Virus record (IMG/VR): IMGVR_UViG_3300043446_003193
Coordinates: 1-64,000 of that record
Reading direction: 5' to 3' (one strand)
DNA length: 64,000 nt
Position numbers and translations under genes: made by a program. The notes beneath the pieces are model-generated. The model made no database searches. It was not told the origin of the DNA and saw only the letters and a program-made list of their open reading frames with translations. How positions within the stretch are numbered: the first letter of the stretch is position 1; every line of letters starts with the position of its first letter. Below, piece after piece: positions 17,973-51,509 of the stretch.

Positions 17973-17982
17973 TTATGTTTTG

Positions 17983-18682: not shown

Positions 18683-18699
18683 TTTTATTTTTTTTTAAG

Positions 18700-18970: not shown

Positions 18971-18974
18971 GAAA

Positions 18975-19047: not shown

Positions 19048-19049
19048 TA

Positions 19050-19935: not shown

Positions 19936-19956
19936 TTAAAGAACTATTCGTTTTAA

Positions 19957-20342: not shown

Positions 20343-20351
20343 TCTTTTTTG

Positions 20352-20424
<73 letters not shown>

Positions 20425-20432
20425 ATATTATG

Positions 20433-20832
20433 TGGAGATGAGGGGATTTGAACCCCTGTCTTACAAAGAACTAATAATACCAGCATATCACACGTTTATT
20501 TCAGTTTCTACTGAAAAAATATTTAATTTAGTTAAAGTGAGTTTAAGGGTTCAAATTAAAAAATAACTCTTCATAACGGAGTCTCACTGTCCTATACTTT
20601 TAGGTGTATTAAACCTTTGTAGACACTTCTGTTACTAGGCGTATGTGTACCGGCCCTATTGTTGTGATTAGGCTGCTACAGCGTAATCAGCACCTACAAA
20701 CGCCATTAAATCGTTGTAAGTCATTGTTGACATTTCGTCATTTATTGTTTTGTACATAGTTTAAAGAGGTATAGTACATATCTCTACGTGTGGTACTACT
20801 ATTTGCATTGCAATCAATTCCATAGCATCCCC
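20433..20832 (-). ncRNA. ssrA: tmRNA
   Basis: 5' GGGGATGCTATGGAATTGA, 3' T-arm plus CATCTCCA (G3:U70); tag frame 20745-20668 INDEMSTMTYNDLMAFVGADYAVAA*. Confidence 0.9.
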
Positions 20833-25697: not shown

Positions 25698-27182
25698 TTA
25701 TAATACCATTCTACTACCTATAAGGAAATTATGTAAAATTGGTGTACCAGGTTGTGTGTTTACACTTGCTCTATAATTGAAACTAAATCCAAATCTTTTA
25801 CTAATTTTATAATCAAACGAACTACCCAACATAAACCCATAATGTCGTGTAACTAATGTATTTCCAGTTTTTGCATTATATGATATTGGTGAGTTCATTC
25901 CAAATACCTGTGGTGATATTGTAAGTTTTCTACTATATTGATAAGGTTTAGTCCAAAACGCCACAACAGAAGTCATTAAGTTGTAATTATACTTACCATC
26001 TGCATCTTTCATCAATAGGTTTATTAATCCCACATTATAACCATAAGTTCCTCTTTTCATATCAGGTTTAATCCAAGTATAACCCAACATATTCATATAA
26101 GTTCCTTTGAGGTATGCAAATGTAGTTCCGTATGAATGTATTGCTTTTAATTGTCCTTCTTCAAATTCCATTTTAGTATATCCACCACTTAATGCGTATT
26201 GGTCCAAAGAACTCCATATCATTCCGTTTACTGATACACTACTTTCTCCGGTCATACTTGCTCTACTCCAACCCAATCCTAATATTGCGTTATATTTTCT
26301 ATCTGGTCCTTCCGATGTTGTTAAATCCGATGAAACTAATTGTGGGTTAAGATTGATTTTCTTTTCTTTTTTCTTTTCATCTTTTTTATCATCCTTCTTT
26401 TCTTCTTTTTTGTCCTCTTTCTTATCTTCCTTTTTTTCTTCTTTCTTTTCATCGGACTTTTTCTCTTCCTTTTTTTCCTCACTCTTACTTTCGGATTTCT
26501 TTTCTTCAGTTTTGCTCTCCGATTTACTCTCACTCTTTGACTCAGATGATGAAGAACTACCCTCACTCTTTGTTTCGGTTTTACTCTCCGAAGATGAAGA
26601 TGAAGAACTGCTTGAGCTTGAAGATGATGAACTACTACTGCTACTACTTCCAGATGATGATGAACTACTACTTGCAGGTGGTGTAGAAGATGTTGATGAT
26701 GTAGATGCGGTTGCTCCACTACTTGCCGCAGAACTACTTGCCGTAGATGCCGATGAACTTGCTGCCGAACTTGCACTACTACTTGCTGCGGTTGATGCCG
26801 ATGAACTCGCTGCGGAAGAAGCTGCTGAACTTGCCGCGGATGATGCAGCTGCTGCGGCTGCTGTTGATGCTGCTTGATTTACTGTCGTTTGGACTGTTTG
26901 TGTTACTACTTGATTTGTAGGACACCCCATTGTTTGATACTTTGTATAAGTTGCGTTTAACCACAACTGGGTTGCGCCTGATTGAACTTCAAATGGTGTG
27001 AATGTCTTTACCTCATTGTAGAAAGAAACGGTGGCATTTCCGTTTATAATCGTTGTAGTCGCTATTTTTGCTTCACCGGTACACTTATCTATAAAAGTTT
27101 GAGTATAAATCTGCCCTTCGGCTTTATTTGCCGTTAGGATTGTAACAATTAATATCGTAAGAGTAACAATCCATTTTTTCAT
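25698..27182 (-). CDS. secreted protein: small N-domain, Ala/Ser-rich and Lys/Glu-rich linker, C-terminal beta-barrel-like domain
   Basis: Signal peptide, low-complexity linker, amphipathic strands with aromatic girdle. Confidence 0.7.
   Translation of the reverse strand: MKKWIVTLTILIVTILTANKAEGQIYTQTFIDKCTGEAKIATTTIINGNATVSFYNEVKTFTPFEVQSGATQLWLNATYTKYQTMGCPTNQVVTQTVQTTVNQAASTAAAAAASSAASSAASSAASSSASTAASSSASSAASSSASTASSSAASSGATASTSSTSSTPPASSSSSSSGSSSSSSSSSSSSSSSSSSSSESKTETKSEGSSSSSESKSESKSESKTEEKKSESKSEEKKEEKKSDEKKEEKKEDKKEDKKEEKKDDKKDEKKKEKKINLNPQLVSSDLTTSEGPDRKYNAILGLGWSRASMTGESSVSVNGMIWSSLDQYALSGGYTKMEFEEGQLKAIHSYGTTFAYLKGTYMNMLGYTWIKPDMKRGTYGYNVGLINLLMKDADGKYNYNLMTSVVAFWTKPYQYSRKLTISPQVFGMNSPISYNAKTGNTLVTRHYGFMLGSSFDYKISKRFGFSFNYRASVNTQPGTPILHNFLIGSRMVL
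26340..26880 (-). repeat. low-complexity coding repeats (ASSAASS, poly-Ser, KKEEK)
   Basis: Imperfect tandem codon repeats inside CDS 25698-27182. Confidence 0.8.
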
Positions 27183-27184
27183 TT

Positions 27185-27481
27185 TTAACGTCTGCCTCCT
27201 CTTGGCATGTATTTAGGCATTGGTCTTGGTGATGGTTGAATACGAACAGGAGGTGTAGGTCTAATAGGAACTACAATTCTAGGTGAATAGTTAAATCTAT
27301 AATATGGAGAACCCCAATAGTTAAAATATAAAGGTGTGTGTAAATATGTATCATCATAAATTACTCTCTTTCTAATTTCTACTAATTTTGTAGAGTCTTT
27401 AGGGTCAATCATTACATATCTAACTGGAGTACAACTTGCTATTCCCAATAACAACATTGCTGCTAATAATAAATTTTTCAT
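27185..27481 (-). CDS. small Pro-rich lipoprotein
   Basis: Lipobox LGIASC. Confidence 0.65.
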   Translation of the reverse strand: MKNLLLAAMLLLGIASCTPVRYVMIDPKDSTKLVEIRKRVIYDDTYLHTPLYFNYWGSPYYRFNYSPRIVVPIRPTPPVRIQPSPRPMPKYMPRGGRR

Positions 27482-28143: not shown

Positions 28144-28866
28144 CTATTTAGTGAATACACCTTTTTTAATCATTTTATCTAATATATTTGCACATGCAAT
28201 ATCTAATGCCTTTTTAGTTGAGATACTAATTGTAGATTGATTGAATTTAATCGGGTCTATTGATGCATCAGAAACTAATGTTAATTGTCTATTTGTTTTA
28301 GCTTCACCTAAACCAGATGCTGCGATAATAGTTCCGTTCTCTGCATTTGTGAATCTAACTTGTAAACCTAAACGAGTTACTAAGTTATCTTTGATACCAT
28401 CTTTTAAATTAATTGTTTCATCTTCTGATACTGAATAATCATATACTTCAATTTCAACAAAGTAATGTGCTAATTTAATCTTTCCTCTACCATCTAATTT
28501 GTTTTCGGAAATTCCAGCTGCTGATGCCTGATATTGCTTTACCATTCTATTCTTAATCTCAGTCTTATCTTCGGTAAATTCAAATCTATTAAGGTTGTCC
28601 AAATATTCTAATACGATATTTGCAACACCCAATCCAACTCTCTTTTCTTTTAATTCAGGGTACATTTCGTACACTTCCTCACCAATACCACATTTTAAGA
28701 TTTGGATGTTCTTTTTAGGTCCATCATAATCCATAAAAGCGGATATATCTTTTTTCTTTTCAAAATCTGCTTTAAACTCTTCTGTTTTTGTTACTCCTAT
28801 TGTTTGTGCAACACCCACAACACTGCTTAACAAAAAGAAACCTAATAATACTAATAAATTTTTCAT
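28144..28866 (-). CDS. CsgG/HfaB-family envelope protein
   Basis: Signal peptide; GLGVANIVLEYL..LNRFEFTE, GLQVRFTNAENGTIIAASG. Confidence 0.65.
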   Translation of the reverse strand: MKNLLVLLGFFLLSSVVGVAQTIGVTKTEEFKADFEKKKDISAFMDYDGPKKNIQILKCGIGEEVYEMYPELKEKRVGLGVANIVLEYLDNLNRFEFTEDKTEIKNRMVKQYQASAAGISENKLDGRGKIKLAHYFVEIEVYDYSVSEDETINLKDGIKDNLVTRLGLQVRFTNAENGTIIAASGLGEAKTNRQLTLVSDASIDPIKFNQSTISISTKKALDIACANILDKMIKKGVFTK

Positions 28867-30123: not shown

Positions 30124-32372
30124 AAATTCAAATTTAATGTTAATGAAATTGTTTGTTCGTTGTTTGTTTTTATAAGATTTCTCTTTGTTTGTAACTTTTG
30201 ATAATAGATTGATGGTTGCGCAAATACATCGCCTATTGCCAATTTTATTTCCCCTTTATTTAATTTATGTAAAAGAGTTATATCCAATACATCTCTGCTG
30301 TTTTCAAAAATGTCTGGATAACCCTGAAATCCTATTGCTGATATTCTATCACCTACTCTATTGTAAGTTATGTTAATTGTATTTTTCTTTTTGTGAATAT
30401 TAAATCCACTATTTAATACATAATTTGATTGTCCCTGTAATTGTCTTTTAACTCCTTTAACATTTACTTCAGAATTCATCACAGAAGCGTTTGTGTAAAC
30501 ATCAAACCAATCATTTAATTTTTTACGAAATTCCAATTCAACACCATAAAGATATGCGTTATTGGGATTTGAATAAGTTAATAATAGATTAGATGGAACT
30601 GAACCATCTGCTACTATTTGCTCAATTGGTTTTATAAAGTTTTTACCAAAAAAAGATACTGAAATATTTTCTCCCGCGTTTGGATATAATTCCCATTTCA
30701 AATCTAAATTGTATATGTCAGATTTTTCCAATTTAGGATTACCCAATAATTGTGCATTTCTTACAAAATCATAATAAGCAAAATTAGCTACTTCTCTAAA
30801 CTCAGGTCTTGCTAATGTTTTACTTAATGAAAATCTATATTTTGTTTTTTCTAAATTGTAAGAAAGATTTAGTGATGGTAATACATCCAAATATTCTCTA
30901 TTAACTTTAACTTTACTTCCACTAAAATCTGCAGTAGATACATCAAATAGATTATATTCAGTTCTAACGCCTGTATTTAATTTCCATAAACCAAATTCTT
31001 TGTCCAACATTACATACCCACTACCTAAATCAAAATCAGCAGTATATTTGTCTGTGTTGTTTGTTATCTCATCTAACATATCAGTTGAAAGATAACGAAA
31101 TATTCTTGCATTAAATCCTCTAATCTTTTTTAAGTATCCACCACCAATCTTAATATCACCAAACGATTTATTAACATTACCATTAAAACTATTTTCATCC
31201 ATTACACTCCAAAAACGATATGTATCTCTCCATGCAGTTGTATATGGTTCGTTTACTCCTAATGATTTTGTAATTGGATTAACTCTATAATCAGGTTGTT
31301 CTCTGAATATAAAATTGTATCCTAAATTAAAATCCCAAGTTTTAAGTTTACCATCAAATTGAGAATTAACTACAACATTGTTTATATGGTTAGATGAATT
31401 ACTATGAACATTTTGAACATTATCATAGTTTTCACCATTTCTATTCATATAAGAATCATCGGCTTGATAGTTCACCAATGTTTTCCAACTATATCGGTTC
31501 TCACCTAAATAAGTTAAATTCAATAAACCATTTGCGGAAAATCTTTTTGAGAATAAAGTATCTCTATAATCGTATGCTAATTCAGTTGAAGATTGATAAT
31601 CTATTCTATCTATATAATTCAGTCCATAAGAATTTCTAATTGTTGAACTGAATAAAGCGTTGAATTTGTTTTTCTTTACACCAAATGATAGGCCACCATT
31701 TAAGTTTGGAGATGATGTAAACCCTTCTATGATTGGATTACTTAATTGTTTTGTGTATAACCTCTTATCACCATTACTACTAATACGATATCCGTAAGTA
31801 GATGGGAATGTGGAAGGGAATTCAGTAGCTTGAACTAACTTAAAATCTTTAAGAGATGAAACTGAGCCCCAACCACTTCCCAATGAGATATTAAAAAAGT
31901 TATCGGATACTTCTTTTGTTGAAACTTGCACCAATCCACCACTCCAATCGCCAGGTAGATTTGCCGATGCCGATTTAGATACTATAATATTATCAATTAA
32001 TGCCGTTGGAATTAAATCAAAAGAAAATGCTCTCTTATCAGGTTCAGTTGATGGTAGAAGGGTTTTGTTTAACATAGCAGAATTATAACGGTCTGCTAAT
32101 CCTCTTACTAATACAAACTTATCGTTTTGTATAGTAACACCACTTACTCTTTTAAGTGCATCCCCAACATTTCTATCAGGTGTTTTTTTAATAAAATCAA
32201 TGGATACACCATCCGAAACTACTGATGCGTTACGAATGGTTGATATTACAGCTACTTCAGTAGATTTTTTACCTGCTGAACGGACTGTAACCGTTGATAA
32301 TTGTTTGGAAAATAATGTGTCTTGGGAATATGTTACAAATGGAAGTAACAATAACAATAAAAAAATCCTCAT
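30120..32372 (-). CDS. TonB-dependent outer-membrane receptor
   Basis: Plug ALKRVSGVTIQ..VLVRGLADRY..SKSASANLPGDWSGG; barrel strands RPEFRE, GNPKL.KS. Confidence 0.9.
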   Translation of the reverse strand: MRIFLLLLLLPFVTYSQDTLFSKQLSTVTVRSAGKKSTEVAVISTIRNASVVSDGVSIDFIKKTPDRNVGDALKRVSGVTIQNDKFVLVRGLADRYNSAMLNKTLLPSTEPDKRAFSFDLIPTALIDNIIVSKSASANLPGDWSGGLVQVSTKEVSDNFFNISLGSGWGSVSSLKDFKLVQATEFPSTFPSTYGYRISSNGDKRLYTKQLSNPIIEGFTSSPNLNGGLSFGVKKNKFNALFSSTIRNSYGLNYIDRIDYQSSTELAYDYRDTLFSKRFSANGLLNLTYLGENRYSWKTLVNYQADDSYMNRNGENYDNVQNVHSNSSNHINNVVVNSQFDGKLKTWDFNLGYNFIFREQPDYRVNPITKSLGVNEPYTTAWRDTYRFWSVMDENSFNGNVNKSFGDIKIGGGYLKKIRGFNARIFRYLSTDMLDEITNNTDKYTADFDLGSGYVMLDKEFGLWKLNTGVRTEYNLFDVSTADFSGSKVKVNREYLDVLPSLNLSYNLEKTKYRFSLSKTLARPEFREVANFAYYDFVRNAQLLGNPKLEKSDIYNLDLKWELYPNAGENISVSFFGKNFIKPIEQIVADGSVPSNLLLTYSNPNNAYLYGVELEFRKKLNDWFDVYTNASVMNSEVNVKGVKRQLQGQSNYVLNSGFNIHKKKNTINITYNRVGDRISAIGFQGYPDIFENSRDVLDITLLHKLNKGEIKLAIGDVFAQPSIYYQKLQTKRNLIKTNNEQTISLTLNLNL

Positions 32373-32453: not shown

Positions 32454-32723
32454 TTATCCTTCTTGTTCAGCGTCTAATTTAGCCGCATCATGTTCTGCTT
32501 TTCTATTGATGTACTTATCAACCGAAGCAATACCAAATGAACCCAAAGTGATTACCAAAAATCCGTTAAAGATATACTCATTAATCAATAATGGTTTACC
32601 CATCCAACCTGTGATAAGGTCAACTGCTAATGCAATTACCATACAACCGAATGATAAGAAACCAACTACTGATTTTTCGTTGATGTCGTTGTTGTCTTTA
32701 AATAATTCTTTAAAAAATCCCAT
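32454..32723 (-). CDS. small membrane protein (holin-like candidate)
   Basis: Two TM helices, charged ends. Confidence 0.55.
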   Translation of the reverse strand: MGFFKELFKDNNDINEKSVVGFLSFGCMVIALAVDLITGWMGKPLLINEYIFNGFLVITLGSFGIASVDKYINRKAEHDAAKLDAEQEG

Positions 32724-32762: not shown

Positions 32763-33335
32763 TTATCCTTTGTACTCTTCTTGTAAAAGTCCACAATTTT
32801 GACACTCCATATGTCCATCACCATCAGCATCTCCCCATACATGTTCACATTGTCTATGTGCATGGTGTTCAAATTCTAACTTCTCCATTTCTTGATCATG
32901 TTCTTGTTGGTCTTTTGCCAATTCAAAGTTTTGTAGGTTTTCTACTACTGCTAATTTGCTAGCTGCAGCAGCTCCTTGAACAAATGCATCTGGAATAATT
33001 GGAGTTGGAATTGCGTTAGTTTCCTTCATATCATTTGTATGTGAAAGTGTAACACCATCTTCTTCATCCATTTTCTGAACTAACATCTTATCCTTATCGG
33101 TATCACTAAACCAATAGTCAATGATTTTACCATAAGAACCAATGAAAGCACCTAACAACAACATTAATAATTCTTTCCATGCTGCCGCCATTGGGGTTTG
33201 TAAACTAATTGCAGTAAAGATACCTGCAATAATTACCATAAACCCACCTAATACCATAGCGGTAATATACCATCTACGGCTCATCATTTTATTTAACAGG
33301 TCTCTAAACCCGCTTGGTGGTTGTTGATTACTCAT
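32763..33335 (-). CDS. membrane protein
   Basis: Two TM helices, LGAFIGSYGKIIDYWFSD, C-terminal C..H/C..C. Confidence 0.6.
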   Translation of the reverse strand: MSNQQPPSGFRDLLNKMMSRRWYITAMVLGGFMVIIAGIFTAISLQTPMAAAWKELLMLLLGAFIGSYGKIIDYWFSDTDKDKMLVQKMDEEDGVTLSHTNDMKETNAIPTPIIPDAFVQGAAAASKLAVVENLQNFELAKDQQEHDQEMEKLEFEHHAHRQCEHVWGDADGDGHMECQNCGLLQEEYKG

Positions 33336-33435: not shown

Positions 33436-33741
33436 TTACCAAGCTGCTGGCTTCTCTTTGAATTCATCACCTTCTTTTTTCTTAACTGGAGCTGCTGGTT
33501 TAGCTGCTTCACCACCTTTATTGATGATTACAGTTTTACCGCCACCTGCTTGTTGAGTTTGGTTGTTCTGAATGTTGATTACAGGAGCCGCTTGTTGAGT
33601 TGGTGTTGCTTCTTTTTCATCACCACCTGTTAATTTTGTTGTTACCCATCCACCTACACCTAAAGTGATTGTAGATACGAAACCGATGATTACATTCTTA
33701 ATAGATGAACCACCACCTTGTTGTTCTTGTTCTTCTGCCAT
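33436..33741 (-). CDS. hypothetical membrane-anchored protein
   Basis: One TM, Q/G/P-rich tail. Confidence 0.6.
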   Translation of the reverse strand: MAEEQEQQGGGSSIKNVIIGFVSTITLGVGGWVTTKLTGGDEKEATPTQQAAPVINIQNNQTQQAGGGKTVIINKGGEAAKPAAPVKKKEGDEFKEKPAAW

Positions 33742-33752
33742 ATACTTAATTT

Positions 33753-34121
33753 TTATAATTTGTTAAAATCTGTTATACCTAATTGTTTTCCGTTTACGTC
33801 ATATAAACCAATTCTATATGCTGATGATGGAAGTGCTGATGTATATACTTTTAAGATATTATCACCACTATTTACCCATGCTGTTTCTTTTGATACTACT
33901 CTGTTTGCAATATCAAATATCTTTATTGTCACATTTTGCCCTGCTTCAACTTTTACATTCATTGCTACTTCTGTTGTCACAAATGGTGATTGTAATTTAA
34001 TACCAACGGATTGTGTAATTGTAAGACCGTTGTCAACCGCAACTGGTGGGGTTACAAATGGGTCTTTTCTACATCCTGCTATAACCATAATTCCGAATAA
34101 TACGAATAATAGTTTTTTCAT
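33753..34121 (-). CDS. lipoprotein with T9SS-CTD-like Ig fold
   Basis: Lipobox IAGC; IKIFDIANRVV...LPSSAYRI. Confidence 0.6.
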   Translation of the reverse strand: MKKLLFVLFGIMVIAGCRKDPFVTPPVAVDNGLTITQSVGIKLQSPFVTTEVAMNVKVEAGQNVTIKIFDIANRVVSKETAWVNSGDNILKVYTSALPSSAYRIGLYDVNGKQLGITDFNKL

Positions 34122-34122
34122 C

Positions 34123-34467
34123 TTAATTTATTGTTATTTTAGTTTTTCCAATTTCTTTGTTACTCTCGTCCGTTAGGTATAAATATAAACTTTTTTGTGA
34201 TAATGATTTAGTATATATTTTTTTTGTGTTATCTCCCACAATTCCAGTAAATTTTTCCTTTGTTATTACCTGCGTTTGTGTTGAATCCATTAAAGTAAGT
34301 ATATATTTACCTGCTGATGTAAGTTTAATTTGTATATCTTGTCCGTCTTTAACCACTACTTCCGATTTTGAAAATATATCGGTTGTTGTTGGTTGTGGTG
34401 TTGGTATAACTTCTACTTTTCTACAAGCTACCAAACTTAAAAATAATATGAATAGTAATTTTTTCAT
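34123..34467 (-). CDS. lipoprotein, paralog of 33753-34121
   Basis: Lipobox LVAC; FTGIVGDNTKKIYTKSL vs NSGDNILKVYTSAL. Confidence 0.6.
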   Translation of the reverse strand: MKKLLFILFLSLVACRKVEVIPTPQPTTTDIFSKSEVVVKDGQDIQIKLTSAGKYILTLMDSTQTQVITKEKFTGIVGDNTKKIYTKSLSQKSLYLYLTDESNKEIGKTKITIN

Positions 34468-37127
34468 TATTGTATTTTTACTCCTAATGATTTTCCATCT
34501 TTATTAACTGCTTCCGAGTTACCCATGCTCACCAATCCCAATCCACCATTCAATTTTTGTGTAGTAGTGAATAGAACTTTATAAGTTGCTGATGTAATTT
34601 GTGAACCATCGGTATTTAAAGAACCCACATTAATAAAAGTTCCTTTGTTTGCGGAATAGTTAGTTGGTGAACCATTTACGATATATTCCGTTTTATTATA
34701 TTTTAACAAAGAGTTATCATAGTTTAATTGGAATTGAGTTCCTACTATGTTGTTATCTCCTGGGTTAAATACGATTTCTACATATACACTATCACCACTC
34801 AATTCAGTCATTATACTTGCATTCATTGGAATACTTACACTTGTGGATTTTATTCTTTCACCAAAGTTTGCTGACATATTTGTTATACCATTTGCCGGCG
34901 GTGTTGCTGAATGTGATAAGTTTACATCACCTTTCCAAGTTACTGCTAAATTGTATGAATAGTTTGTTTTTCCTTCTAATAAACTAAAACTATATTCCTT
35001 TCCTAAATAAGATGGGAATTGTTGCCAATTAGATTTTCCAATAGTTCCGTATGTAGAGTCCAACACAATTTTCATAGTGCTATCCAAAACATACTTATTT
35101 ACTAAATCTCTTGCACCAGTTAGATATTGTAACAATCTAAAGCAATCTCTTTCATCAAATACATTATTACCATCTACGTCTGCGTTTTTGAATTGAATAC
35201 CATATCCAAATTGTGTTCCACTTCCACCACCAAACAAACCACCTGCTTCTGAATATTCTTTGAATGCTAAATAAACATCCGATACAGTCACAATACTATT
35301 ATAAAGTGTTTTAAGTTGTGTAGAGTCATAGTCTTGGAATACAAATTTGTGTTGTTTGTATGTACCTTGTTGTGTAAGTGTAATTGTACTTTGGAAAGCG
35401 TAATCCGTATTCCAATTATTTACATTTCTAATGTATGAATTTGATGCTGAAGTTCCATCTGTTATTTTTGTTAGTGGTGATGGGACTGTGTATATTGCCC
35501 AACCATTTGCATCATGTGAAGTATATGTCATAGGGCCATCATATGCATCAAATATTTTTGTATGTGTGATTTTGGTAGGGTCAATACTACCAACTTGTCT
35601 CATATCAATTAATAATCTACTTTTACCACTACCCAACCAACTTGCGTTTGGATTTGTATAAGACCATTCAACTTGACCCGGTGTAATTGTTGCTTTATAT
35701 GCAGTTGGATTGGCAACAAATTGATAACTCAATCCCCACGCACCCCACACATCCGATGTTACTCCGTTTTGTGTTGTTGATGGATAATCGTTTTGCCCTT
35801 CAACTATTTTAATGTAAACTTCTTTTGTTTGTCCGGCAGTTACTATTCCTGCATGCACCGCTGCTTTTGGAATATATGAGTCGTTAGTGTATATGTTTGT
35901 TCCCCAAATTGCACCACCACCAGTGTTACCTGTTATGGTCATTTTATATATCTTACCAATATCACTTTCACTATATTGAGTCATATCATTTGCTGCTGCT
36001 ATTGATATTGCAGATGAAAATACCTTTGCCGTATCTAATTGAGTTGATAGAGTTACCCTTCCCACTCCATTTAATGCCACATTTGAATTTGCAGTCCAAG
36101 CTGATGTTGCATCATTTCTTTTATGTAATGCTGCTGAAAATTTAGTTTCATCAATATTACCACCAAAGTTAATTGTAAATTGTGATTTTAAATTATTGTT
36201 TACACCATTATAATGCACCACACTATTATTATAAAAATCAGTAAAAGTTTGGTCATCAGGATTACTCCAAGTTCCAAACTCAATTACATATCCACCCAAT
36301 CCACCAGGGAACGCCGTTGCTTCGGGTCCAAAATCATTCCATTGTGAACCATTCCATTTTGTTACAACATAATCCTCACCAGGTCCCCAGTTGTTTGGTT
36401 CACCACTTGCCCAGTTATTATATTGCCCTGTTTGATTTGTTGAATTTATTCTTACGACAGTTCCATTTTCAGGTCCTGCATCAATTACAAATCTACCTTC
36501 GGTTACATTATCCGTAAGTGCGAATATAATATTATTCCCAGGTACATTGTTTACAACAAAGTTATCTTCATCCGATGATGTGATTGTCATTAAATAACCC
36601 GTTTGTCCTTTGAATGATTGTTGAGTACAATAGGTTTTAAGATTATTATATGCAGTTACAGAAGTTCCACTAAATGCGGTTACCCCGGTAAACCCACTCA
36701 TAGGTCTATAAAAGTGTCCGTTTGTTGGTAAGTAATAATATCCCGTTGGGTTGACAGTTGCTGATACTGAAATACTAATATCACCCGCTGTTCCCGTTGT
36801 GTTTATTTTCATTGATGCTAATACATTGTTAATATTAGCCATTGTTCCGGTGAATGAAATACGAGTTTTATTACCACTCATTGTGTAACCGGTTGATGCA
36901 GTTACGCCGGATGTTGTTGAGAAATAAAATGTAGTTCCGCTTGGTGCTGTGGGTAAACCAATTGCACAAAGTAAAGTTGCAGTAGAGTTGAACCCACTCA
37001 ATGTAAATCCACTTGCATCTTGTCCTGATGTATTGACAGTAAATTCTTTAGGGTCTGGTGCATTTACCTGCTGACCAAACCCTAAAAATGATATAAATAA
37101 GAATAGTGTAACTAATAATTTTTTCAT
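34467..37127 (-). CDS. large secreted adhesin-like protein: C-type-lectin-like, LCCL, dockerin-like and cohesin-like domains
   Basis: WASGEPNN..EDY...WND (CTL); IWGTNIYTNDSYIPKAAVHAG (LCCL); DVDGNNVFDERD (dockerin/EF loop); GTQFQLNYDNSLLKY (cohesin). Confidence 0.7.
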   Translation of the reverse strand: MKKLLVTLFLFISFLGFGQQVNAPDPKEFTVNTSGQDASGFTLSGFNSTATLLCAIGLPTAPSGTTFYFSTTSGVTASTGYTMSGNKTRISFTGTMANINNVLASMKINTTGTAGDISISVSATVNPTGYYYLPTNGHFYRPMSGFTGVTAFSGTSVTAYNNLKTYCTQQSFKGQTGYLMTITSSDEDNFVVNNVPGNNIIFALTDNVTEGRFVIDAGPENGTVVRINSTNQTGQYNNWASGEPNNWGPGEDYVVTKWNGSQWNDFGPEATAFPGGLGGYVIEFGTWSNPDDQTFTDFYNNSVVHYNGVNNNLKSQFTINFGGNIDETKFSAALHKRNDATSAWTANSNVALNGVGRVTLSTQLDTAKVFSSAISIAAANDMTQYSESDIGKIYKMTITGNTGGGAIWGTNIYTNDSYIPKAAVHAGIVTAGQTKEVYIKIVEGQNDYPSTTQNGVTSDVWGAWGLSYQFVANPTAYKATITPGQVEWSYTNPNASWLGSGKSRLLIDMRQVGSIDPTKITHTKIFDAYDGPMTYTSHDANGWAIYTVPSPLTKITDGTSASNSYIRNVNNWNTDYAFQSTITLTQQGTYKQHKFVFQDYDSTQLKTLYNSIVTVSDVYLAFKEYSEAGGLFGGGSGTQFGYGIQFKNADVDGNNVFDERDCFRLLQYLTGARDLVNKYVLDSTMKIVLDSTYGTIGKSNWQQFPSYLGKEYSFSLLEGKTNYSYNLAVTWKGDVNLSHSATPPANGITNMSANFGERIKSTSVSIPMNASIMTELSGDSVYVEIVFNPGDNNIVGTQFQLNYDNSLLKYNKTEYIVNGSPTNYSANKGTFINVGSLNTDGSQITSATYKVLFTTTQKLNGGLGLVSMGNSEAVNKDGKSLGVKIQ

Positions 37128-37130
37128 TTA

Positions 37131-38780
37131 TTATTCTATGTTTAGATTTAGTTTGTTTCCGTTTCCGTCAACTGCATCTGCTAATACGAAATAGAATAAA
37201 CCTGCTGTATTTTGTAATGTCTCTTTTGGAGTAAATATCAATTTGTATGGAGTTCCAACTTTTATTCTTGCAGTTTTTAATTGGTCAATAGAACCAAATG
37301 TTAATCTACCATCTGCTTTTGTTGAGAAGTTAGTCATTGTTGAACCCGTATTGAATATTACATTATCTAAAGTTAATTTTGTGCTATCGTATTGCATTAT
37401 CACTTGTAAACCTGCTAAACCTTCTTTTGTTAAGTTAGTATAAATTACAACTTTACCACCTTCCAATTTAGAAGTTACACCCAATGATATACTTTCAATT
37501 GTTGGTGCTGAATAAGCCATAGAACTTACTGCCATTGAACGGATGCCATCTACTTTTAATCCGTTTGTTGCATTTGTATAAACACCTGCAGTTATTCTTG
37601 CTGCGATTGTATCAGGGAAAGATGAATGTGACCAGTCTAAATCACCACCCCATGCAAATACTGCTTCTGCTGTTTGTTGAGGTGCGGTTACATACACTCT
37701 ATTTGTAGGTGTTCCGTTTAACCAACTTTGATTTAATAAACCACTATGCCATCTCCACGAAGTTGAAGTTTGTGTTGGAATATATGCATTTGCGGAAACA
37801 TCTTGTCCCATTACATAAGCAAATAAGTTATATGCATCTGCTTCTGTAAAGTCCATATCGTTTTTAGTTACATTACCAATTCTTTTTTCTAATGCAGGTC
37901 TTTGAAAATATGTTGGAGTTCCTGCTAAATCAGTTTGAGTAATACCCAAAAATGCTTTATATGCATCAGAGACTGTTATTACATTATTCATCCAAGCTTT
38001 TGATGATGCGTTTGAAACAAATACACCAATACTATCACCGACTTTGATACCAGATGTGAATAGAGCTTCACCACTTGCATCTAATGCTTTTTGTGCTATT
38101 GGTTGTTTTGTCCAATCTATACCACCACTACCATCAGTTTTTAAATACATTAATTGAACATTGTGGTCAGTAATTGAATATCCTGATGGATATAATACTC
38201 TTACTTTAAAATAAGATGTGTTACCCGTTACACCAGTTATTGATAAAGGACCTGATGTTGTTTTGATGTATGGGATGTATGCACCACTTGCACTATCCGT
38301 TGCGTATGAAAGGTCTAATTTGTGGAAGTTTTCGTATGCGTTTTGGTCTTTGATAACATACTTTTGAGTTGCTAATACGCCATCTATACTTTTATCTGCT
38401 CTTTGAACTGCTAATTGTCCAACATTCCAATCCGCATTCGCTGCATATCCCCAAGGTGTAGAACCATATTGTGCATATAAAGAAGTATCTGCTATATTTG
38501 CGTTTGGAGTGAATTTATAGCTTGACCAACCTGTATAGTATGTTTGTGATGAACTACCTTGTGAGAATGTAGTTGAAAGATAAGTTAACGCCTTATTGTT
38601 ATATTGATATCTTAACCAAAAATAACGAGGTTTGGTTTCACCTTTATTGACAGTATATGTTATTGTTATTGTATCGCCAACCTTGTATGGTCCAGATGAT
38701 ACCGATTGATTAACAACAATTTGTCCAAATGATAATATAGTTACAAACAAAGCTGCAACTAACAAAGATAGTTTTTTCAT
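37131..38780 (-). CDS. secreted protein with cohesin-like domains and a degenerate dockerin
   Basis: Signal peptide; GDTITITY..LRYQYNNKALTY; GNVTKNDMDFTEADAY; LAGLQVIMQYDSTKL. Confidence 0.6.
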   Translation of the reverse strand: MKKLSLLVAALFVTILSFGQIVVNQSVSSGPYKVGDTITITYTVNKGETKPRYFWLRYQYNNKALTYLSTTFSQGSSSQTYYTGWSSYKFTPNANIADTSLYAQYGSTPWGYAANADWNVGQLAVQRADKSIDGVLATQKYVIKDQNAYENFHKLDLSYATDSASGAYIPYIKTTSGPLSITGVTGNTSYFKVRVLYPSGYSITDHNVQLMYLKTDGSGGIDWTKQPIAQKALDASGEALFTSGIKVGDSIGVFVSNASSKAWMNNVITVSDAYKAFLGITQTDLAGTPTYFQRPALEKRIGNVTKNDMDFTEADAYNLFAYVMGQDVSANAYIPTQTSTSWRWHSGLLNQSWLNGTPTNRVYVTAPQQTAEAVFAWGGDLDWSHSSFPDTIAARITAGVYTNATNGLKVDGIRSMAVSSMAYSAPTIESISLGVTSKLEGGKVVIYTNLTKEGLAGLQVIMQYDSTKLTLDNVIFNTGSTMTNFSTKADGRLTFGSIDQLKTARIKVGTPYKLIFTPKETLQNTAGLFYFVLADAVDGNGNKLNLNIE

Positions 38781-38782
38781 AT

Positions 38783-39430
38783 TTACTCAAATAGTTTGGT
38801 GATAAGTTTAATAGAACCTTTCTTCAATGCATTACTCAATGAAGTTTGGTTAAACTTACCACCCTCATCTACTATGAGAGTTGACATTGAGATTTCTGCT
38901 GAACTTTCTTCTACAATAACCTCTTTGTCTTTTTTGCCATCTTTGTAAAGTGTTCCTCTAAGGCGAATGACTACCTCTTCTTCTCCTTTGTGAAATACGG
39001 AGATATTTGATTTTGTTGTTAAAACATCTAAATAGATAATTTCAACTTTTAATTTTTGTGTTGCTGATGGTGCTAAATCCAATCCTTTTTCTTGTAATGC
39101 TTCTTCCAAAACATTTTTAACACCAAATGCTAAATTTCTGTTTCCAGCTAATTTACCAACTTTAACTTTATTTTCTACACTTTCTACCCAAATGTGTTCT
39201 TCGGCATTGTACCAAATATTTTCTGGTGAGTTTTTGAATGTACCATCAAATTTCCAACTAAACCAATTTGCAATGTTTGTTTCTAATTCAGTTTTACCTG
39301 CAAAATGTATACCAACCATTGTAAGTTGAAATAATAATGCAAATACAATCCATATACCTACTAAAGTTAAAAACCCTCTAAATAGATAATCTCCTAAATT
39401 TTGTTTTAAATGTAATAACTTTGCTTTCAT
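38783..39430 (-). CDS. membrane-anchored hypothetical protein
   Basis: N-terminal TM; periplasmic alpha/beta domain. Confidence 0.6.
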   Translation of the reverse strand: MKAKLLHLKQNLGDYLFRGFLTLVGIWIVFALLFQLTMVGIHFAGKTELETNIANWFSWKFDGTFKNSPENIWYNAEEHIWVESVENKVKVGKLAGNRNLAFGVKNVLEEALQEKGLDLAPSATQKLKVEIIYLDVLTTKSNISVFHKGEEEVVIRLRGTLYKDGKKDKEVIVEESSAEISMSTLIVDEGGKFNQTSLSNALKKGSIKLITKLFE

Positions 39431-39485: not shown

Positions 39486-39674
39486 TTAATCTAAGTTATC
39501 TTTTTCAAAACTACCTAAAAAGTGATGAATAGGTGTCCAAAGGCAATATATACCAACTGCTTCTAAAAAAGATAGTTTTGGTAATACTGTTATTAATTGA
39601 GTTAAATACGATATTGCCAATCCTATAACACAAGTTACAACTATTACATTTAATGTTATTTTAATTTTTTCCAT
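39486..39674 (-). CDS. small membrane protein
   Basis: Hydrophobic 62 aa; own Bacteroidota-type promoter at ~39680-39711. Confidence 0.55.
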   Translation of the reverse strand: MEKIKITLNVIVVTCVIGLAISYLTQLITVLPKLSFLEAVGIYCLWTPIHHFLGSFEKDNLD

Positions 39675-39711: not shown

Positions 39712-39742
39712 AAAAAAGGGAGTATTTAACTCCCTTTCTTTT
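39712..39742 (-). terminator. intrinsic terminator after the endolysin
   Basis: AAAGGGAGT-TAAAT-ACTCCCTTT plus U-tract. Confidence 0.75.
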
Positions 39743-40578
39743 TATGCTAATAAAGAATAATATTCTTTAAAATGCTTAATTCTATCTGGCAATCCAATTG
39801 TACCACCATTTACTCTTTTAGTAATTGATGTTACAACTGCATCGGTTGCACCACCATCTGCCATTTTGTGTAAACCATTCTTATTAAAGAACCATGCTGC
39901 TGATAATAATGCATATTTTTCAGCTACTACTTGTGGATTTGCTGTTACATCTTCACCAATTGATTTACCAAATGCAGTGTAGTTATCTCTACCTGTTAAT
40001 TGGATAAAACCACGACCACAAAACTTTGCACCATCACCACTACTTTCAGGTCCATTACCCATTCTACCACCATATACTTTGTTTGCAATCTTTTCAGGTT
40101 GTCTAGCATATTGATTTGCCAATGCTTCTGTTGGGAAATACTTTTTGAATATACCCATCAAACCTTTTGCTGAATAATTTAAGTTTTCTTTTGTAAGTCT
40201 AAATCCACCACTTTCATGTCCACATTGTGCTAAAAAGTGTGCTAATCTCAATGCAGAGTCAATTTGAAACTTTTGTGCTACTGCAGGAATCATTGCGATT
40301 ACTGAATCTGGAATATGTCCTTTTAATTTATCTAATTTTAAACCAGTTGAATTAGCTACTGCTACTGCTTGTTGTTTTACTTCTGGATGTTCTTCTTCAC
40401 CCATAATCATTGCCCAAGTCTTGTCACCTACAATGCCATCTGCGGTTAAACCATGAGCTGCTTGCCATAATTTTACTGCTTCTTCGGTTTTCGGTCCAAA
40501 GTTACCAACTGGCTCTAAGTGTAATTTCTTTTGTAATAATTTTACGTTTTCGTTATTATCGCCTTTTCTTAACAACAT
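39742..40578 (-). CDS. endolysin: peptidoglycan-binding domain plus GH19 muramidase
   Basis: LRKGD..VKLLQ...GLTADGIVG; HFLAQCGHESGGF, GRGFIQLTGRDNY, VNGG.IGL.DR. Confidence 0.92.
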   Translation of the reverse strand: MLLRKGDNNENVKLLQKKLHLEPVGNFGPKTEEAVKLWQAAHGLTADGIVGDKTWAMIMGEEEHPEVKQQAVAVANSTGLKLDKLKGHIPDSVIAMIPAVAQKFQIDSALRLAHFLAQCGHESGGFRLTKENLNYSAKGLMGIFKKYFPTEALANQYARQPEKIANKVYGGRMGNGPESSGDGAKFCGRGFIQLTGRDNYTAFGKSIGEDVTANPQVVAEKYALLSAAWFFNKNGLHKMADGGATDAVVTSITKRVNGGTIGLPDRIKHFKEYYSLLA

Positions 40579-51508: not shown

Positions 51509-51509
51509 A

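What the first reader, a model, noticed from the sequence alone, without database searches (positions are those of the whole stretch)
33436..39430. Phage-encoded cohesin/dockerin lectin proteins that could polymerise on the host surface
Seen: two adjacent secreted proteins share a C-terminal plan: a dockerin-like Ca loop (DVDGNNVFDERD / NVTKNDMDFTEAD), a conserved motif (WKGDVNLSHS / WGGDLDWSHS), then a cohesin-like domain. One carries C-type-lectin-like and LCCL domains. They sit next to two paralogous Ig-like lipoproteins and a membrane-anchored protein. Established: cohesin-dockerin pairs assemble multiprotein surface complexes. Inference: proteins with both modules can chain head-to-tail into a glycan-binding surface fibre, for adhesion, receptor masking or superinfection exclusion.
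Basis: partly seen in the sequence, partly recalled or inferred. Interest (0 to 1): 0.7.

Follow-up and report, generated by a model that had tools for sequence, protein, structure and literature searches.

The report
Phage cohesin-dockerin lectin envelope proteins
A large freshwater phage of Bacteroidota encodes two exported proteins built from real cohesin and dockerin modules (the "plug and socket" parts of bacterial cellulosomes), one of them with animal-type sugar-binding domains. This looks like the first phage-encoded cohesin-dockerin system, but where it assembles and what it does are still inferred.

Summary

**Shared module.** The 549-aa and 886-aa proteins share a C-terminal module of about 290 aa. 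It has a dockerin-like F-hand region, an almost invariant GD-x-[DN]-x-SHS motif, a flexible linker and a true cohesin (Z 13.6 to solved cohesins; profile E 5e-8).

**New findings.**
- The 549-aa protein has a second cohesin at its N-terminus, giving a scaffoldin-like Coh-X-Doc-Coh layout.
- The 886-aa protein has a C-type lectin domain with the EPN/WND sugar-binding motifs, plus an LCCL domain. Distant relatives carry PA14 instead.

**Export and host.** Nearly all family members have a Sec signal peptide followed by Gln, the Bacteroidetes Q-rule. They are therefore exported proteins, not ordinary virion parts.

**Genomic context.** The genes lie in a conserved envelope cassette beside lysis genes. 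Its core members are an LptE/YajG-like protein, the scaffold, an Ig-like lipoprotein, a CsgG/LpoB-like protein and an outer-membrane barrel-like protein. The cassette occurs in thousands of metagenomic variants of an uncultivated jumbo phage clade of about 200-240 kb.

**What is not shown.** Head-to-tail polymerisation and surface display are plausible but untested. The one complex prediction gave no verdict, and no route across the outer membrane is evident.

**Verdict.** This is a new variant of a known kind.

The parts
37131..38780 (-). 549-aa scaffoldin-like exported protein: signal peptide - Coh(N) - Ig-like X - dockerin module - linker - Coh(C)
   Evidence: AF2 model pLDDT 89. Fold matches. 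More than 3300 metagenomic homologues.
38223..38723 (-). N-terminal cohesin of the 549-aa protein (residues 20-186)
   Evidence: Z 13.6, rmsd 2.1 A over 131 residues against 1g1k; the leading matches are almost all cohesins. Weak Pfam Cohesin hit, 13.2 bits.
38010..38222 (-). Ig-like 'X' beta-sandwich (residues 187-257) before the dockerin
   Evidence: Secondary structure of the model. Residues 19-384 align as a unit with CipA Coh9-X-Doc (3kcp_A, 4fl4_L) at high rmsd.
37581..38009 (-). Dockerin module of the 549-aa protein (residues 258-400): TVSDAY helix, degenerate F-hand NVTKNDMDFTEAD, beta hairpins, GDLDWSHS motif
   Evidence: Alignment A3. Profile against PDB gives dockerins. D272, D315 and D380 are invariant. 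Motif conservation.
37134..37508 (-). C-terminal cohesin of the 549-aa protein (residues 425-549)
   Evidence: Pfam Cohesin E 1.7e-4, below the cut-off. Family profile against PDB cohesins, E 5e-8. It is the most conserved domain of the protein, 39% mean pairwise identity.
34467..37127 (-). 886-aa exported lectin protein: signal peptide - N domain - C-type lectin - beta - LCCL - beta-sandwich - dockerin module - linker - Coh(C)
   Evidence: More than 2100 metagenomic homologues.
36258..36722 (-). C-type lectin domain (residues about 136-290) with EPN (243-245) and WND (263-265) motifs
   Evidence: phmmer against rat MBP-A, E 6e-5, with EPN and WND aligned. Z 10.3 to human MBP 1hup. Motifs conserved in 18 of 22 members. 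Pfam 20.2 bits here, below the cut-off; orthologues pass it.
35736..35915 (-). LCCL domain (residues 405-464)
   Evidence: Pfam LCCL E 6e-14, 52.4 bits. Absent from the 763-aa orthologue in L001.
34893..35330 (-). Dockerin module of the 886-aa protein (residues 600-745): TVSDVY helix, canonical F-hand DVDGNNVFDERD, GDVNLSHS motif
   Evidence: Pfam Dockerin_1 16 bits, below the cut-off.
34470..34832 (-). C-terminal cohesin of the 886-aa protein (residues 766-886)
   Evidence: Z 13.6, rmsd 2.1-2.4 A to type I cohesins. Pfam Cohesin 28.7 bits, above the cut-off.
38783..39430 (-). 215-aa protein: one N-terminal transmembrane segment plus an LptE/YajG-like periplasmic domain; conserved first gene of the cassette
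   Evidence: Pfam Lipoprotein_16 E 1e-5. Transmembrane segment 14-46. LptE-like by the ESM atlas, weak. Homologues in L001, L006 and L017.
34123..34467 (-). 114-aa lipoprotein with an Ig-like beta-sandwich
   Evidence: Lipobox LVAC. Paralogue of the 122-aa lipoprotein, E 2e-11. Family alignment with invariant Cys.
33753..34121 (-). 122-aa lipoprotein with an Ig-like beta-sandwich (weakly T9SS-CTD/DUF3244-like); always follows the cohesin gene in relatives
   Evidence: Synteny in L001, L005, L006, L017 and L019.
33436..33741 (-). 101-aa protein with one transmembrane segment and a Pro/Lys-rich tail
   Evidence: Transmembrane segment 17-35. Homologue in L001 by BLASTP. A similar 102-aa gene in L006 by eye only.
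32763..33335 (-). 190-aa membrane protein with an acidic region that looks coiled-coil-like and a C-terminal Cys/DADGDG motif
   Evidence: Homologue of 221 aa in L001.
32454..32723 (-). 89-aa holin-like protein with two transmembrane segments
   Evidence: Hydropathy. 53% identical homologue next to an Amidase_2 endolysin in L006.
39486..39674 (-). 62-aa small membrane protein between the endolysin and the cassette
   Evidence: Hydropathy. Conserved in L001.
39742..40578 (-). Endolysin (PG_binding_1 + GH19), followed by a terminator-like hairpin
   Evidence: phrog_181 E 1e-69. Pfam hits. Hairpin at 39740-39712.
28144..28866 (-). 240-aa exported CsgG/HfaB/LpoB-like protein; conserved cassette member, separated here by an inserted TonB-receptor pair
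   Evidence: ESM atlas score 0.94, TM 0.60-0.66 to the CsgG/HfaB family. 46-50% identical homologues in L006 and L017.
25698..27182 (-). 494-aa exported protein: Ser/Ala then Lys/Glu low-complexity stretch plus a C-terminal outer-membrane beta-barrel-like domain; conserved cassette member
   Evidence: Sequence. Homologues. Porin/OMP-like by atlas features, a lead only.

Best explanation
The region is part of a conserved envelope cassette of an uncultivated, contractile-tailed jumbo phage of about 209 kb that infects freshwater Bacteroidota.

**What the two proteins are.** Two paralogous proteins are exported by Sec and signal peptidase I.
- The 549-aa protein is a scaffoldin-like Coh-X-Doc-Coh protein.
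- The 886-aa protein is a lectin, with an EPN-type C-type lectin domain and LCCL, that ends in the same Doc-linker-Coh module.

**Proposed mechanism.** Outside the cytoplasm, where Ca2+ is available, the dockerin modules plug into the cohesins. There are three cohesins and two dockerins between the two proteins. This would build a multivalent, possibly branched or chained, glycan-binding complex. The conserved 549-aa protein would be the scaffold and the lectin the exchangeable specificity subunit. The co-encoded membrane protein, Ig-like lipoproteins, CsgG-like protein and barrel protein would hold the complex in the envelope.

**Proposed role.** Because the cassette travels with holin-like and endolysin genes, I think the complex most likely acts late. 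It would coat host envelope glycans on the dying cell and its debris, or be set free at lysis. That would mask receptors, so that progeny are not wasted on debris and superinfection is hindered.

**Shown:** the modules, export signals, lectin motifs, synteny and restriction of the family to phage contigs.
**Inferred:** cohesin-dockerin pairing, polymer or complex formation, location beyond the periplasm, and the masking role.
For: **Modules**
- Cohesin folds: Z 13.6 for 886 Coh(C) and for 549 Coh(N). Foldseek leading matches are mostly cohesins. Profile against PDB, E 5e-8. Pfam Cohesin above its cut-off.
- Dockerin homology is weak but specific. The Ca-ligand positions are conserved.
- The same dockerin module sits at the C-terminus of RTX proteases in Bacteroidota genomes, the classical position for a dockerin.
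- Coh(C) and the dockerin helices are the most conserved parts of the scaffold, at 39% and 32% against 23% for X and 14% for the linker.

**Lectin**
- EPN/WND C-type lectin domain and LCCL.
- The N-terminal sugar-binding domains are swapped between lineages: no LCCL in L001, PA14/GLEYA in P0209 and P0200. The Doc-Coh end is kept.

**Export and host**
- Signal peptide followed by Gln in 47 of 53, 114 of 115 and 119 of 120 family members. Q-rule references: PMC5837995, PMC10653852.

**Context**
- A five-gene core is conserved in three divergent lineages. It lies next to endolysins of two different types, GH19 and Amidase_2.
- Only these two genes in the genome carry the modules.
- The tail sheath gene lies at 97 kb and a prohead-protease-like gene near 154 kb, far from the cassette.

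**Precedent and structural relatives**
- R. bromii Amy4 self-aggregates through its own cohesin and dockerin (PMC4611034).
- The nearest structural relatives are bacterial T9SS surface proteins with cohesin and dockerin, plus a phage protein annotated with a T9SS sorting domain.
Against: - No direct evidence of binding. The complex prediction gave 'no answer': score 0.38 against a best control of 0.29.
- Dockerin_1 never reaches the Pfam cut-off. The first F-hand is degenerate in both proteins, and in the 549-aa protein of this phage the second loop has also lost canonical ligands (NVTKNDMDFTEAD).
- No T9SS C-terminal sorting domain, lipobox or other outer-membrane export signal was found on either protein. 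They may therefore stay periplasmic until lysis.
- The long flexible linker would also allow an intramolecular Doc-Coh clasp instead of a chain.
- Timing of expression is unknown. A terminator-like hairpin separates the endolysin from the cassette.
- The lectin target is unknown.
- The 886 model has low confidence (pLDDT 64).
Confidence: 0.5

Rival explanations
1. Lysis-machinery reading. The cohesin-dockerin proteins are structural parts of a periplasm-spanning complex that helps breach or detach the outer membrane at lysis, a modular functional analogue of spanins. The inner membrane side would be the 215-aa, 101-aa and 190-aa membrane proteins. The outer membrane side would be the lipoproteins and the barrel protein. 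The lectin domain would grip peptidoglycan (GlcNAc) or LPS.
For: - The cassette lies next to endolysins of two unrelated types and to holin-like small membrane proteins in divergent phages.
- It contains inner-membrane-anchored proteins, outer-membrane lipoproteins and a barrel-like protein.
- EPN-type C-type lectin domains bind GlcNAc/mannose-type sugars (established knowledge).
- No export route beyond the periplasm is evident.
Against: - The lectin domains vary between lineages (C-type lectin, with or without LCCL, or PA14). That fits a variable target better than invariant peptidoglycan.
- L006 and L017 encode no lectin paralogue within the cassette stretches examined.
- Separate spanin-like candidates exist: a Pro-rich 98-aa lipoprotein at 27185-27481 and the 190-aa protein with a transmembrane segment and a coiled-coil-like region.
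- Nothing resembles known spanins in PHROGs.
Confidence: 0.15
2. Virocell surface-adhesin reading. The proteins are displayed on the surface of the living infected cell. They could be held by the LES-like lipoproteins or plugged into host cohesin-dockerin surface proteins. There they would form a lectin fibre for particle or glycan adhesion, nutrient capture or early superinfection exclusion.
For: - Most of the co-encoded lipoproteins have a C-x-K-[D/E] start resembling the Bacteroidetes lipoprotein export signal (PMC5080379).
- Structural relatives are T9SS-secreted surface proteins, and one phage relative is annotated with a T9SS sorting domain.
- Bacteroidota genomes encode proteins with the same dockerin module.
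- This phage also carries TonB-dependent transporter genes and glycosyltransferases nearby.
Against: - The 549-aa and 886-aa proteins have no sorting domain or lipid anchor of their own.
- The export-signal match is partial in the two lipoproteins of this window (CRKVE, CRKDP).
- The TonB-dependent transporter genes are absent from the relatives' cassettes.
- No evidence bears on expression timing.
Confidence: 0.2
3. Virion-arming reading. The proteins mature in the Ca2+-containing periplasm and, at lysis, dock onto a virion protein. Progeny particles would thereby gain a glycan-binding adhesin: an exchangeable receptor-binding or particle-adherence subunit with a conserved attachment end.
For: - The architecture mirrors receptor-binding proteins, with a conserved attachment module and a variable sugar-binding module.
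- There is one more cohesin than there are dockerins.
- A 97-aa cytoplasmic ORF beside a prohead-protease-like gene carries a single dockerin-like EF-hand (17.3 bits).
Against: - I know of no precedent for this.
- The 97-aa hit is one short loop below the Pfam cut-off.
- No other cohesin or dockerin gene is in the genome.
- Dilution at lysis would work against assembly.
Confidence: 0.07

Closest known systems
Cellulosomal scaffoldins, e.g. Clostridium thermocellum CipA C-terminus (Coh9-X-DocII; PDB 3kcp, 4fl4)
   Same: The 549-aa protein has the same module order, cohesin - Ig-like X - dockerin, and its cohesins superpose on type I/II cohesins at Z 12-13.6. Assembly is presumed to use the same Ca2+-dependent cohesin-dockerin principle.
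   Different: - It is encoded by a phage of a Gram-negative Bacteroidota host.
- It has only two cohesins, one placed after the dockerin.
- It has no CBM and no dockerin-bearing enzymes. The cargo is a lectin.
- The dockerin has one canonical F-hand at most, plus an added beta region with a GD-x-[DN]-x-SHS motif.
Ruminococcus bromii amylosome protein Amy4 (cohesin and dockerin in one polypeptide)
   Same: One polypeptide carries both modules. Amy4's dockerin binds its own cohesin, so the protein autoaggregates (PMC4611034). That is the behaviour proposed here.
   Different: Amy4 is an enzyme of a Gram-positive bacterium. The phage proteins have no catalytic domain, and their self-binding is untested.
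Non-cellulosomal cohesin-dockerin proteins of bacteria, including T9SS-targeted surface proteins (AFDB clusters A0A3M1X096, A0A7Y5R635)
   Same: These are the best whole-length structural matches to the 549-aa model, E 1.6e-17 over residues 18-548. The same dockerin module occurs in Bacteroidota proteases.
   Different: The bacterial relatives carry a T9SS C-terminal sorting domain or enzyme domains. The phage proteins end with the cohesin and have no sorting domain. Sequence identity is only 11-15%.
Collectins (mannose-binding protein A/C) and cochlin/factor C LCCL proteins
   Same: The C-type lectin domain has the EPN and WND Ca2+/sugar-ligand motifs and aligns with MBP-A. The LCCL domain passes the Pfam cut-off.
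   Different: The canonical disulfide cysteines are lacking: there are only 3 Cys in 886 aa. There is no collagen or coiled-coil neck. Multivalency would come from cohesin-dockerin assembly instead.
Phage envelope-directed exclusion proteins (T5 Llp, T4 Imm/Sp)
   Same: These are phage-encoded, exported envelope proteins that protect the infected cell or the progeny by blocking receptors or entry. This comparison rests on my own knowledge.
   Different: They are small single-domain proteins with no lectin, cohesin or dockerin. There is no homology.

Membership tests
Cohesin (Pfam PF00963; type I/II cohesin modules) | Nine-stranded beta-sandwich jelly-roll fold superposable on solved cohesins | tested here: met
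   886 residues 764-886: Z 13.6, rmsd 2.1-2.4 A. 549 residues 19-186: Z 13.6, rmsd 2.1 A. The 549 C-terminal domain was not searched alone, but the type II cohesin dyad 3l8q_B aligns across residues 19-549 without rigid superposition (rmsd 34 A).
Cohesin (Pfam PF00963; type I/II cohesin modules) | Sequence score above the curated family cut-off (24.1 bits) | tested here: met
   - 886 C-terminus: 28.7 bits.
- 549 C-terminus: below the cut-off, at 22.3 and 17.9 bits.
- 549 N-terminus: 13.2 bits.
- Family profile against PDB cohesins: E 5e-8.
- 29 of 33 members hit the family individually.
Cohesin (Pfam PF00963; type I/II cohesin modules) | Binds a cognate dockerin | tested here: inconclusive
   Complex prediction gave 'no answer'. 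This needs a binding assay.
Dockerin (Pfam PF00404) | Two tandem segments of about 22 residues, each a Ca2+-binding F-hand loop followed by a helix | tested here: inconclusive
   The second segment is canonical in 886 (DVDGNNVFDERD; D/N at positions 1, 3, 5, 9 and 12). The first segment keeps only the helix and its Asp (TVSD). In 549 the second loop is degenerate. The model shows helices at 262-266, 270-281, 295-302 and 313-323.
Dockerin (Pfam PF00404) | Sequence score above the curated cut-off (22.9 bits) | tested here: not met
   The score is 16 bits for 886. The best family member reaches E 1.5e-3. The profile against PDB gives 12 dockerins among 15 hits, but only at E 0.02-0.1. I file it as dockerin-like and probably homologous.
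Dockerin (Pfam PF00404) | Ca2+-dependent folding and binding | not testable with these tools
   Needs biochemistry.
C-type lectin domain (Pfam PF00059), carbohydrate-recognition type | EPN or QPD motif plus WND motif that ligate Ca2+ and sugar | tested here: met
   EPN at 243-245 and WND at 263-265 align with those of MBP-A. They are conserved in 18 of 22 members.
C-type lectin domain (Pfam PF00059), carbohydrate-recognition type | Family cut-off (22.6 bits) and conserved disulfides | tested here: not met
   The window protein scores 20.2 bits, while orthologues score 23.7 and 37.8 bits. There are only 3 Cys in the whole protein, so the canonical disulfides are absent. The fold match is Z 10.3 to 1hup on a low-confidence model.
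LCCL domain (Pfam PF03815) | Family cut-off (22.6 bits) | tested here: met
   52.4 bits, E 6e-14, residues 405-464. The four conserved cysteines of animal LCCL domains cannot all be present, since the whole protein has only 3 Cys.
T9SS cargo (type A or B C-terminal sorting domain) | C-terminal Por_Secre_tail / TIGR04183 / TIGR04131 domain | tested here: not met
   There was no hit on the 549-aa or 886-aa protein in Pfam or NCBIfam at E 0.1. Both end with the cohesin. Only the small neighbouring lipoproteins show weak Por_Secre_tail likeness.
Cellulosome / amylosome-type enzyme complex | Dockerin-bearing enzymes recruited to a cohesin scaffold | tested here: not met
   Only the two proteins themselves carry the dockerin module in the 209-kb genome. 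Neither has a catalytic domain.
Virion tail / structural proteins | Homology to known phage structural families, or position in a structural module | tested here: not met
   There is no PHROG match. Cleavable signal peptides are present. Neighbours are lysis, nuclease and glycosyltransferase genes. The sheath gene is at 97 kb.

The most novel reading that the evidence does not exclude
A widespread clade of freshwater Bacteroidota jumbo phages builds its own cohesin-dockerin 'adhesome'. A phage-encoded scaffoldin (Coh-X-Doc-Coh) would polymerise with interchangeable lectin subunits (C-type lectin/LCCL or PA14). The complex would be mounted in or released from the host envelope by a dedicated five-gene outer-membrane module: an LptE-like protein, a CsgG-like protein, a barrel protein and lipoproteins. 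This would be the first viral use of cellulosome-type assembly, here to coat or cross-link host glycans at lysis.
Probability: 0.3. Interest if true: 0.8.

Novelty: new variant of a known kind. Interest (0 to 1): 0.66.

Why it matters
**New setting for a known system.** Cohesin-dockerin assembly is known from bacterial and some archaeal surface complexes. I found no report of it in a virus: searches of about 8.4 million papers returned nothing relevant.

**Scale.** Here it occurs in thousands of metagenomic variants of an abundant, uncultivated jumbo phage clade. It is joined to animal-type sugar-recognition domains and to a conserved set of envelope proteins beside the lysis genes.

**If the modules do pair**
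- Phages would be remodelling or coating the Gram-negative envelope with self-assembling lectin complexes. That is a new class of late or auxiliary function, bearing on receptor masking, debris decoys and particle attachment in lakes.
- It would offer a compact, cysteine-poor, Ca2+-dependent cohesin-dockerin pair from Bacteroidota for protein engineering.

**Annotation value.** The work also gives a handle for five conserved 'hypothetical' genes of these phages.

Tried and rejected
- **Known phages.** Megablast and tblastn against GenBank phages found no match. The lineage is known only from metagenomes.
- **PHROGs and NCBIfam.** Nothing useful for the cassette proteins.
- **Whole-protein phmmer of the 549-aa protein against PDB.** Only chance immunoglobulin hits. 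Profiles and fold search were needed.
- **Complex prediction.** I tested the 886 dockerin module against 549 Coh(N) and Coh(C). The verdict was 'no answer', so I do not use it as evidence either way.
- **The search for related loci with the broad alignment.** It failed for lack of a conserved stretch. With the narrower alignment, only one partial hit appeared in 185,579 species genomes. It lies at the end of a 10-kb contig of an uncultured Bacteroidetes MAG and is probably a binned phage contig.
- **Host assignment through the phage TonB-dependent receptor.** The best identities were only 40-48% in 401 Bacteroidota genomes, and names were withheld, so no genus could be inferred.
- **Metatranscriptome contigs.** Two RNA libraries hold fragments of related cassettes, but this does not prove transcription.
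- **C-terminal domain as a T9SS sorting domain.** Considered and rejected. It is a full cohesin, and no sorting-domain model hits it.
- **Ordinary tail fibre.** Considered and rejected because of the signal peptides, the genomic context and the lack of structural homology.
- **97-aa ORF with a dockerin-like loop near the head genes.** Kept only as a lead.

Full report
**Setting.**
- The window is the first 64 kb of a 209,443-bp single-contig IMG/VR virus record that CheckV rates complete.
- Every ORF of 150 aa or more, bar two embedded antisense ORFs, is on the minus strand.
- An array of 19 tRNA genes and a tmRNA gene lies at 13.9-20.8 kb.
- A contractile tail sheath gene lies at about 97 kb, and a prohead-protease-like gene near 154 kb.
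- The record is therefore a jumbo myovirus-like phage.
- Near-identical DNA is held by many freshwater metagenomes. Nothing similar is found among GenBank phages.

**The observation.** The finding covers six minus-strand genes: 215 aa (38783-39430), 549 aa (37131-38780), 886 aa (34467-37127), 114 aa (34123-34467), 122 aa (33753-34121) and 101 aa (33436-33741).
- The 549-aa and 886-aa proteins share a C-terminal region of about 290 aa, 24% identity, E 2e-9.
- The two small proteins are paralogues, E 2e-11. Both have lipoboxes, and the Cys is invariant in eight homologues.
- The 215-aa and 101-aa proteins each have one N-terminal transmembrane segment.

**Cohesins.**
- An AlphaFold2 model of the 886-aa protein has modest overall confidence (pLDDT 64), but about 64-85 over the C-terminal domain by 10-residue blocks. 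That domain (764-886) aligns with some 25 different solved cohesins at Z 12-13.6, rmsd 2.1-2.6 A.
- Pfam Cohesin scores 28.7 bits on this region, above the curated cut-off.
- A profile of the C-terminal 130 residues from 33 family members finds 15 cohesins among 16 PDB hits, best E 5e-8. 29 of the 33 members hit Pfam Cohesin on their own.
- The 549-aa model is confident (pLDDT 89). It brought a surprise: the strongest cohesin match is the N-terminal domain, residues 19-186 (Z 13.6, rmsd 2.1 A against 1g1k).
- This protein therefore has two cohesins. Residues 19-384 align as a unit, loosely, with the Coh9-X-dockerin end of the C. thermocellum scaffoldin CipA (3kcp, 4fl4).
- Its layout is signal peptide, Coh(N), Ig-like X, dockerin module, a disordered linker of about 20 residues, then Coh(C).

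**Dockerin module.**
- Across 31 diverse members the region reads VVTVSDVYLAF ... IQ ... DV-N-x-DG-x-(V/F)-x-x-x-D-S-Y-x-LL-x-H-L-x-G. That is one degenerate and one canonical F-hand segment.
- In the 886 family the loop positions 1, 3, 5, 9 and 12 are D/N throughout.
- A profile of the region finds dockerins almost exclusively in the PDB, 12 of 15 hits, though only at E 0.02-0.1. The best alignment, to R. flavefaciens Doc8, covers both segments.
- Eight of 31 members touch Pfam Dockerin_1 below its cut-off.
- The same profile finds the module in 7 of 301 sampled Bacteroidota genomes. Examples are the extreme C-terminus of an RTX-repeat subtilase and of an RTX-repeat matrixin-like protease, the classical place for a dockerin. 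Another is a 1296-aa protein that ends in a T9SS-type sorting domain.
- I therefore call it a divergent but probably homologous dockerin. In the 549-aa protein of this particular phage the loop has lost canonical ligands.
It sits at the end of a beta region just before the linker. Its role is unknown; an extra Ca2+ site is my guess.

**Lectin part.**
- Residues 180-270 of the 886-aa protein align with rat mannose-binding protein A (E 6e-5). EPN and WND, the Ca2+/sugar ligands of mannose-type C-type lectins, fall in register. Both motifs are kept in 18 of 22 relatives.
- LCCL passes its cut-off (E 6e-14).
- The protein has only three cysteines, so the disulfides of the animal domains are missing.
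- The 763-aa orthologue in 238-kb relatives lacks LCCL. Remote members carry PA14/GLEYA in front of the same Doc-Coh end.
- The sugar-binding head is thus exchangeable and the C-terminal module constant. Within the scaffold family, Coh(C) (39% mean pairwise identity) and the dockerin helices (32%) are the most conserved domains. Coh(N) is at 27%, X at 23% and the linker at 14%.

**Export and host.**
- Both proteins start with a typical n-h-c signal peptide followed by Gln.
- That pattern holds in 47 of 53 representative relatives, 114 of 115 close 549-type homologues and 119 of 120 close 886-type homologues.
- Gln at +1 after signal peptidase I cleavage is the Bacteroidetes Q-rule (PMC5837995, PMC10653852).
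- This indicates Sec export and a Bacteroidota host. The only hit in 185,579 species genomes is a short contig of an uncultured Bacteroidetes MAG.
- No T9SS sorting domain or lipobox is present on either protein.

**Context.**
- The family is large but narrow. There are more than 3300 and more than 2100 metagenomic proteins at 60-97% identity. Yet only 116 clusters at 50% identity match among 1.84 billion representatives.
- In 238-kb relatives the order is endolysin, 58 aa, 217 aa, 555 aa, 763 aa, 114 aa, 121 aa, 101 aa, 221 aa, 90 aa.
- In a relative only about 25% identical (L006) the order is as follows:
  1. 163-aa homologue of the 215-aa protein.
  2. 583-aa Coh-X-Doc-Coh scaffold.
  3. 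129-aa lipoprotein.
  4. A coiled-coil-like lipoprotein.
  5. 102-aa gene resembling the 101-aa gene (by eye).
  6. 81-aa homologue of the 89-aa holin-like protein.
  7. An Amidase_2 endolysin.
  8. 236-aa and 531-aa proteins.
- A third lineage (L017) has the same core.
- In this window the homologues of the last two are the 240-aa protein (28144-28866) and the 494-aa protein (25698-27182). The 240-aa protein is CsgG/HfaB/LpoB-like by language-model features and predicted structure. The 494-aa protein has a low-complexity stretch and an outer-membrane barrel-like end.
- Here they are separated from the rest by an inserted TonB-dependent receptor and lipoprotein pair that relatives lack.
- The conserved core is therefore five genes: an LptE/YajG-like protein, the cohesin scaffold, an Ig-like lipoprotein, a CsgG-like protein and a barrel-like protein. 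They usually lie beside holin-like and endolysin genes.
- The lipoproteins mostly begin C-x-K-[D/E], which resembles the Bacteroidetes lipoprotein surface-export signal K-(D/E)2 (PMC5080379). The match is only partial in this phage.
- Four of eight lipoproteins weakly resemble T9SS sorting domains.

**Structural relatives.**
- The best whole-length matches to the 549-aa model are bacterial proteins annotated as T9SS cargo, aligned over residues 18-548 (E 1.6e-17). Cohesin or dockerin proteins and a mini-scaffoldin follow.
- Among viral models the top hit is a 636-aa protein of an uncultured phage, annotated with a T9SS sorting domain (E 7e-20).
- Related architectures thus do reach the cell surface in other organisms, but through a sorting domain that these two proteins lack.

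**Does dockerin bind cohesin here?**
It scored 0.38, against 0.00 for unrelated partners. It still scored 0.29 when Coh(N) was replaced.
- The tool's verdict is 'no answer', and I do not count it as evidence.
- Only these two genes in the genome carry the modules. A 97-aa ORF near the head genes has one dockerin-like EF-hand loop, which is a lead only.
- Precedent exists for self-assembly of a protein with both modules: R. bromii Amy4 (PMC4611034).

**Interpretation.**
- Shown: genuine cohesins, a probable dockerin, a genuine sugar-binding lectin head, Sec export, phage-restricted distribution and conserved linkage to envelope and lysis genes.
- Inferred: the modules pair to give a multivalent lectin complex, with the 549-aa protein as scaffold. 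The complex works in or on the envelope, most likely late, coating host glycans on the lysing cell and its debris.
- Rivals are listed with their tests: a spanin-like lysis structure, a true surface adhesin of the living infected cell, or arming of virions after lysis.
Its fibre-on-the-surface mechanism is possible but unproven.

**Novelty.**
- I found no paper on phage-encoded cohesin or dockerin, nor on a phage protein combining C-type lectin and LCCL domains.
- The parts are known kinds, but their combination, carrier and context are new. I therefore rate it a new variant of a known kind, of fairly high interest.

Noticed in passing
window 13965-20832: A dense array of 19 tRNA genes, one with an odd two-base anticodon call at 18975-19046. 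A phage-encoded tmRNA with tag peptide DEMSTMTYNDLMAFVGADYAVAA lies at 20432-20832.
   Followed up: no
window 28921-32372 and 42686-45967: There are two phage-encoded TonB-dependent-receptor-like outer-membrane barrels. The 750-aa one has Plug and OMP_b-brl_3 domains. The 1093-aa one has CarboxypepD_reg and OMP_b-brl_4 domains. The first is translationally coupled to a 400-aa lipoprotein. This pair is absent from the cassette of the 238-kb relatives, so it is an insertion in this phage. The best Bacteroidota homologues are only 40-48% identical.
   Followed up: partly
window 27185-27481 and 32763-33335: A 98-aa lipoprotein has a proline-rich tail and is o-spanin-like. A 190-aa membrane protein has an acidic, coiled-coil-like region and a C-terminal Cys/DADGDG motif and is i-spanin-like. 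Together they are candidate spanin equivalents for this phage clade.
   Followed up: no
window 25698-27182: A 494-aa exported protein has a stretch of about 190 residues of almost pure Ser/Ala, then Lys/Glu repeats, before a conserved outer-membrane barrel-like end. It is conserved in three phage lineages.
   Followed up: partly
G000:C1:154668-154742 (outside the window; locus L012): A 97-aa cytoplasmic ORF ends in a single dockerin-like EF-hand (DVDKDGEIEGSD; Dockerin_1 17.3 bits, below the cut-off). It lies next to a prohead-protease-like gene and might be a virion-side partner for the spare cohesin.
   Followed up: partly
window 50420-51520 and 59350-62005: A cluster of glycosyltransferase genes, including a GtrB-like O-antigen-conversion type. 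It suggests the phage also alters host or virion glycans.
   Followed up: no
window 5477-9236: A MoxR/CbbQ-type AAA ATPase (424 aa) lies next to a 763-aa protein with a weak CobT-like PHROG match. PHROGs labels this pair as porphyrin/cobalamin biosynthesis.
   Followed up: no
loci L035, L036, L037 (Bacteroidota genomes G055, G290): Cellular Bacteroidota proteins carry the same dockerin module, including the GD-x-D-x-SHS region. Two are RTX-repeat proteases (S8 subtilase, matrixin-like) with the module at the extreme C-terminus. One is a 1296-aa protein with a T9SS-type end. This looks like an apparently undescribed non-cellulosomal dockerin system in this phylum.
   Followed up: partly
window 39712-39740: A strong terminator-like hairpin (12-bp stem followed by a T run) lies directly after the endolysin gene. 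The envelope cassette is therefore probably a transcription unit of its own.
   Followed up: no
window 33436-39430 in runs X23, X24: Two freshwater metatranscriptome libraries hold contig fragments 85-99% identical to parts of the cassette (lipoprotein, 549-aa and 215-aa genes). This is compatible with expression in nature, but DNA carry-over is not excluded.
   Followed up: partly
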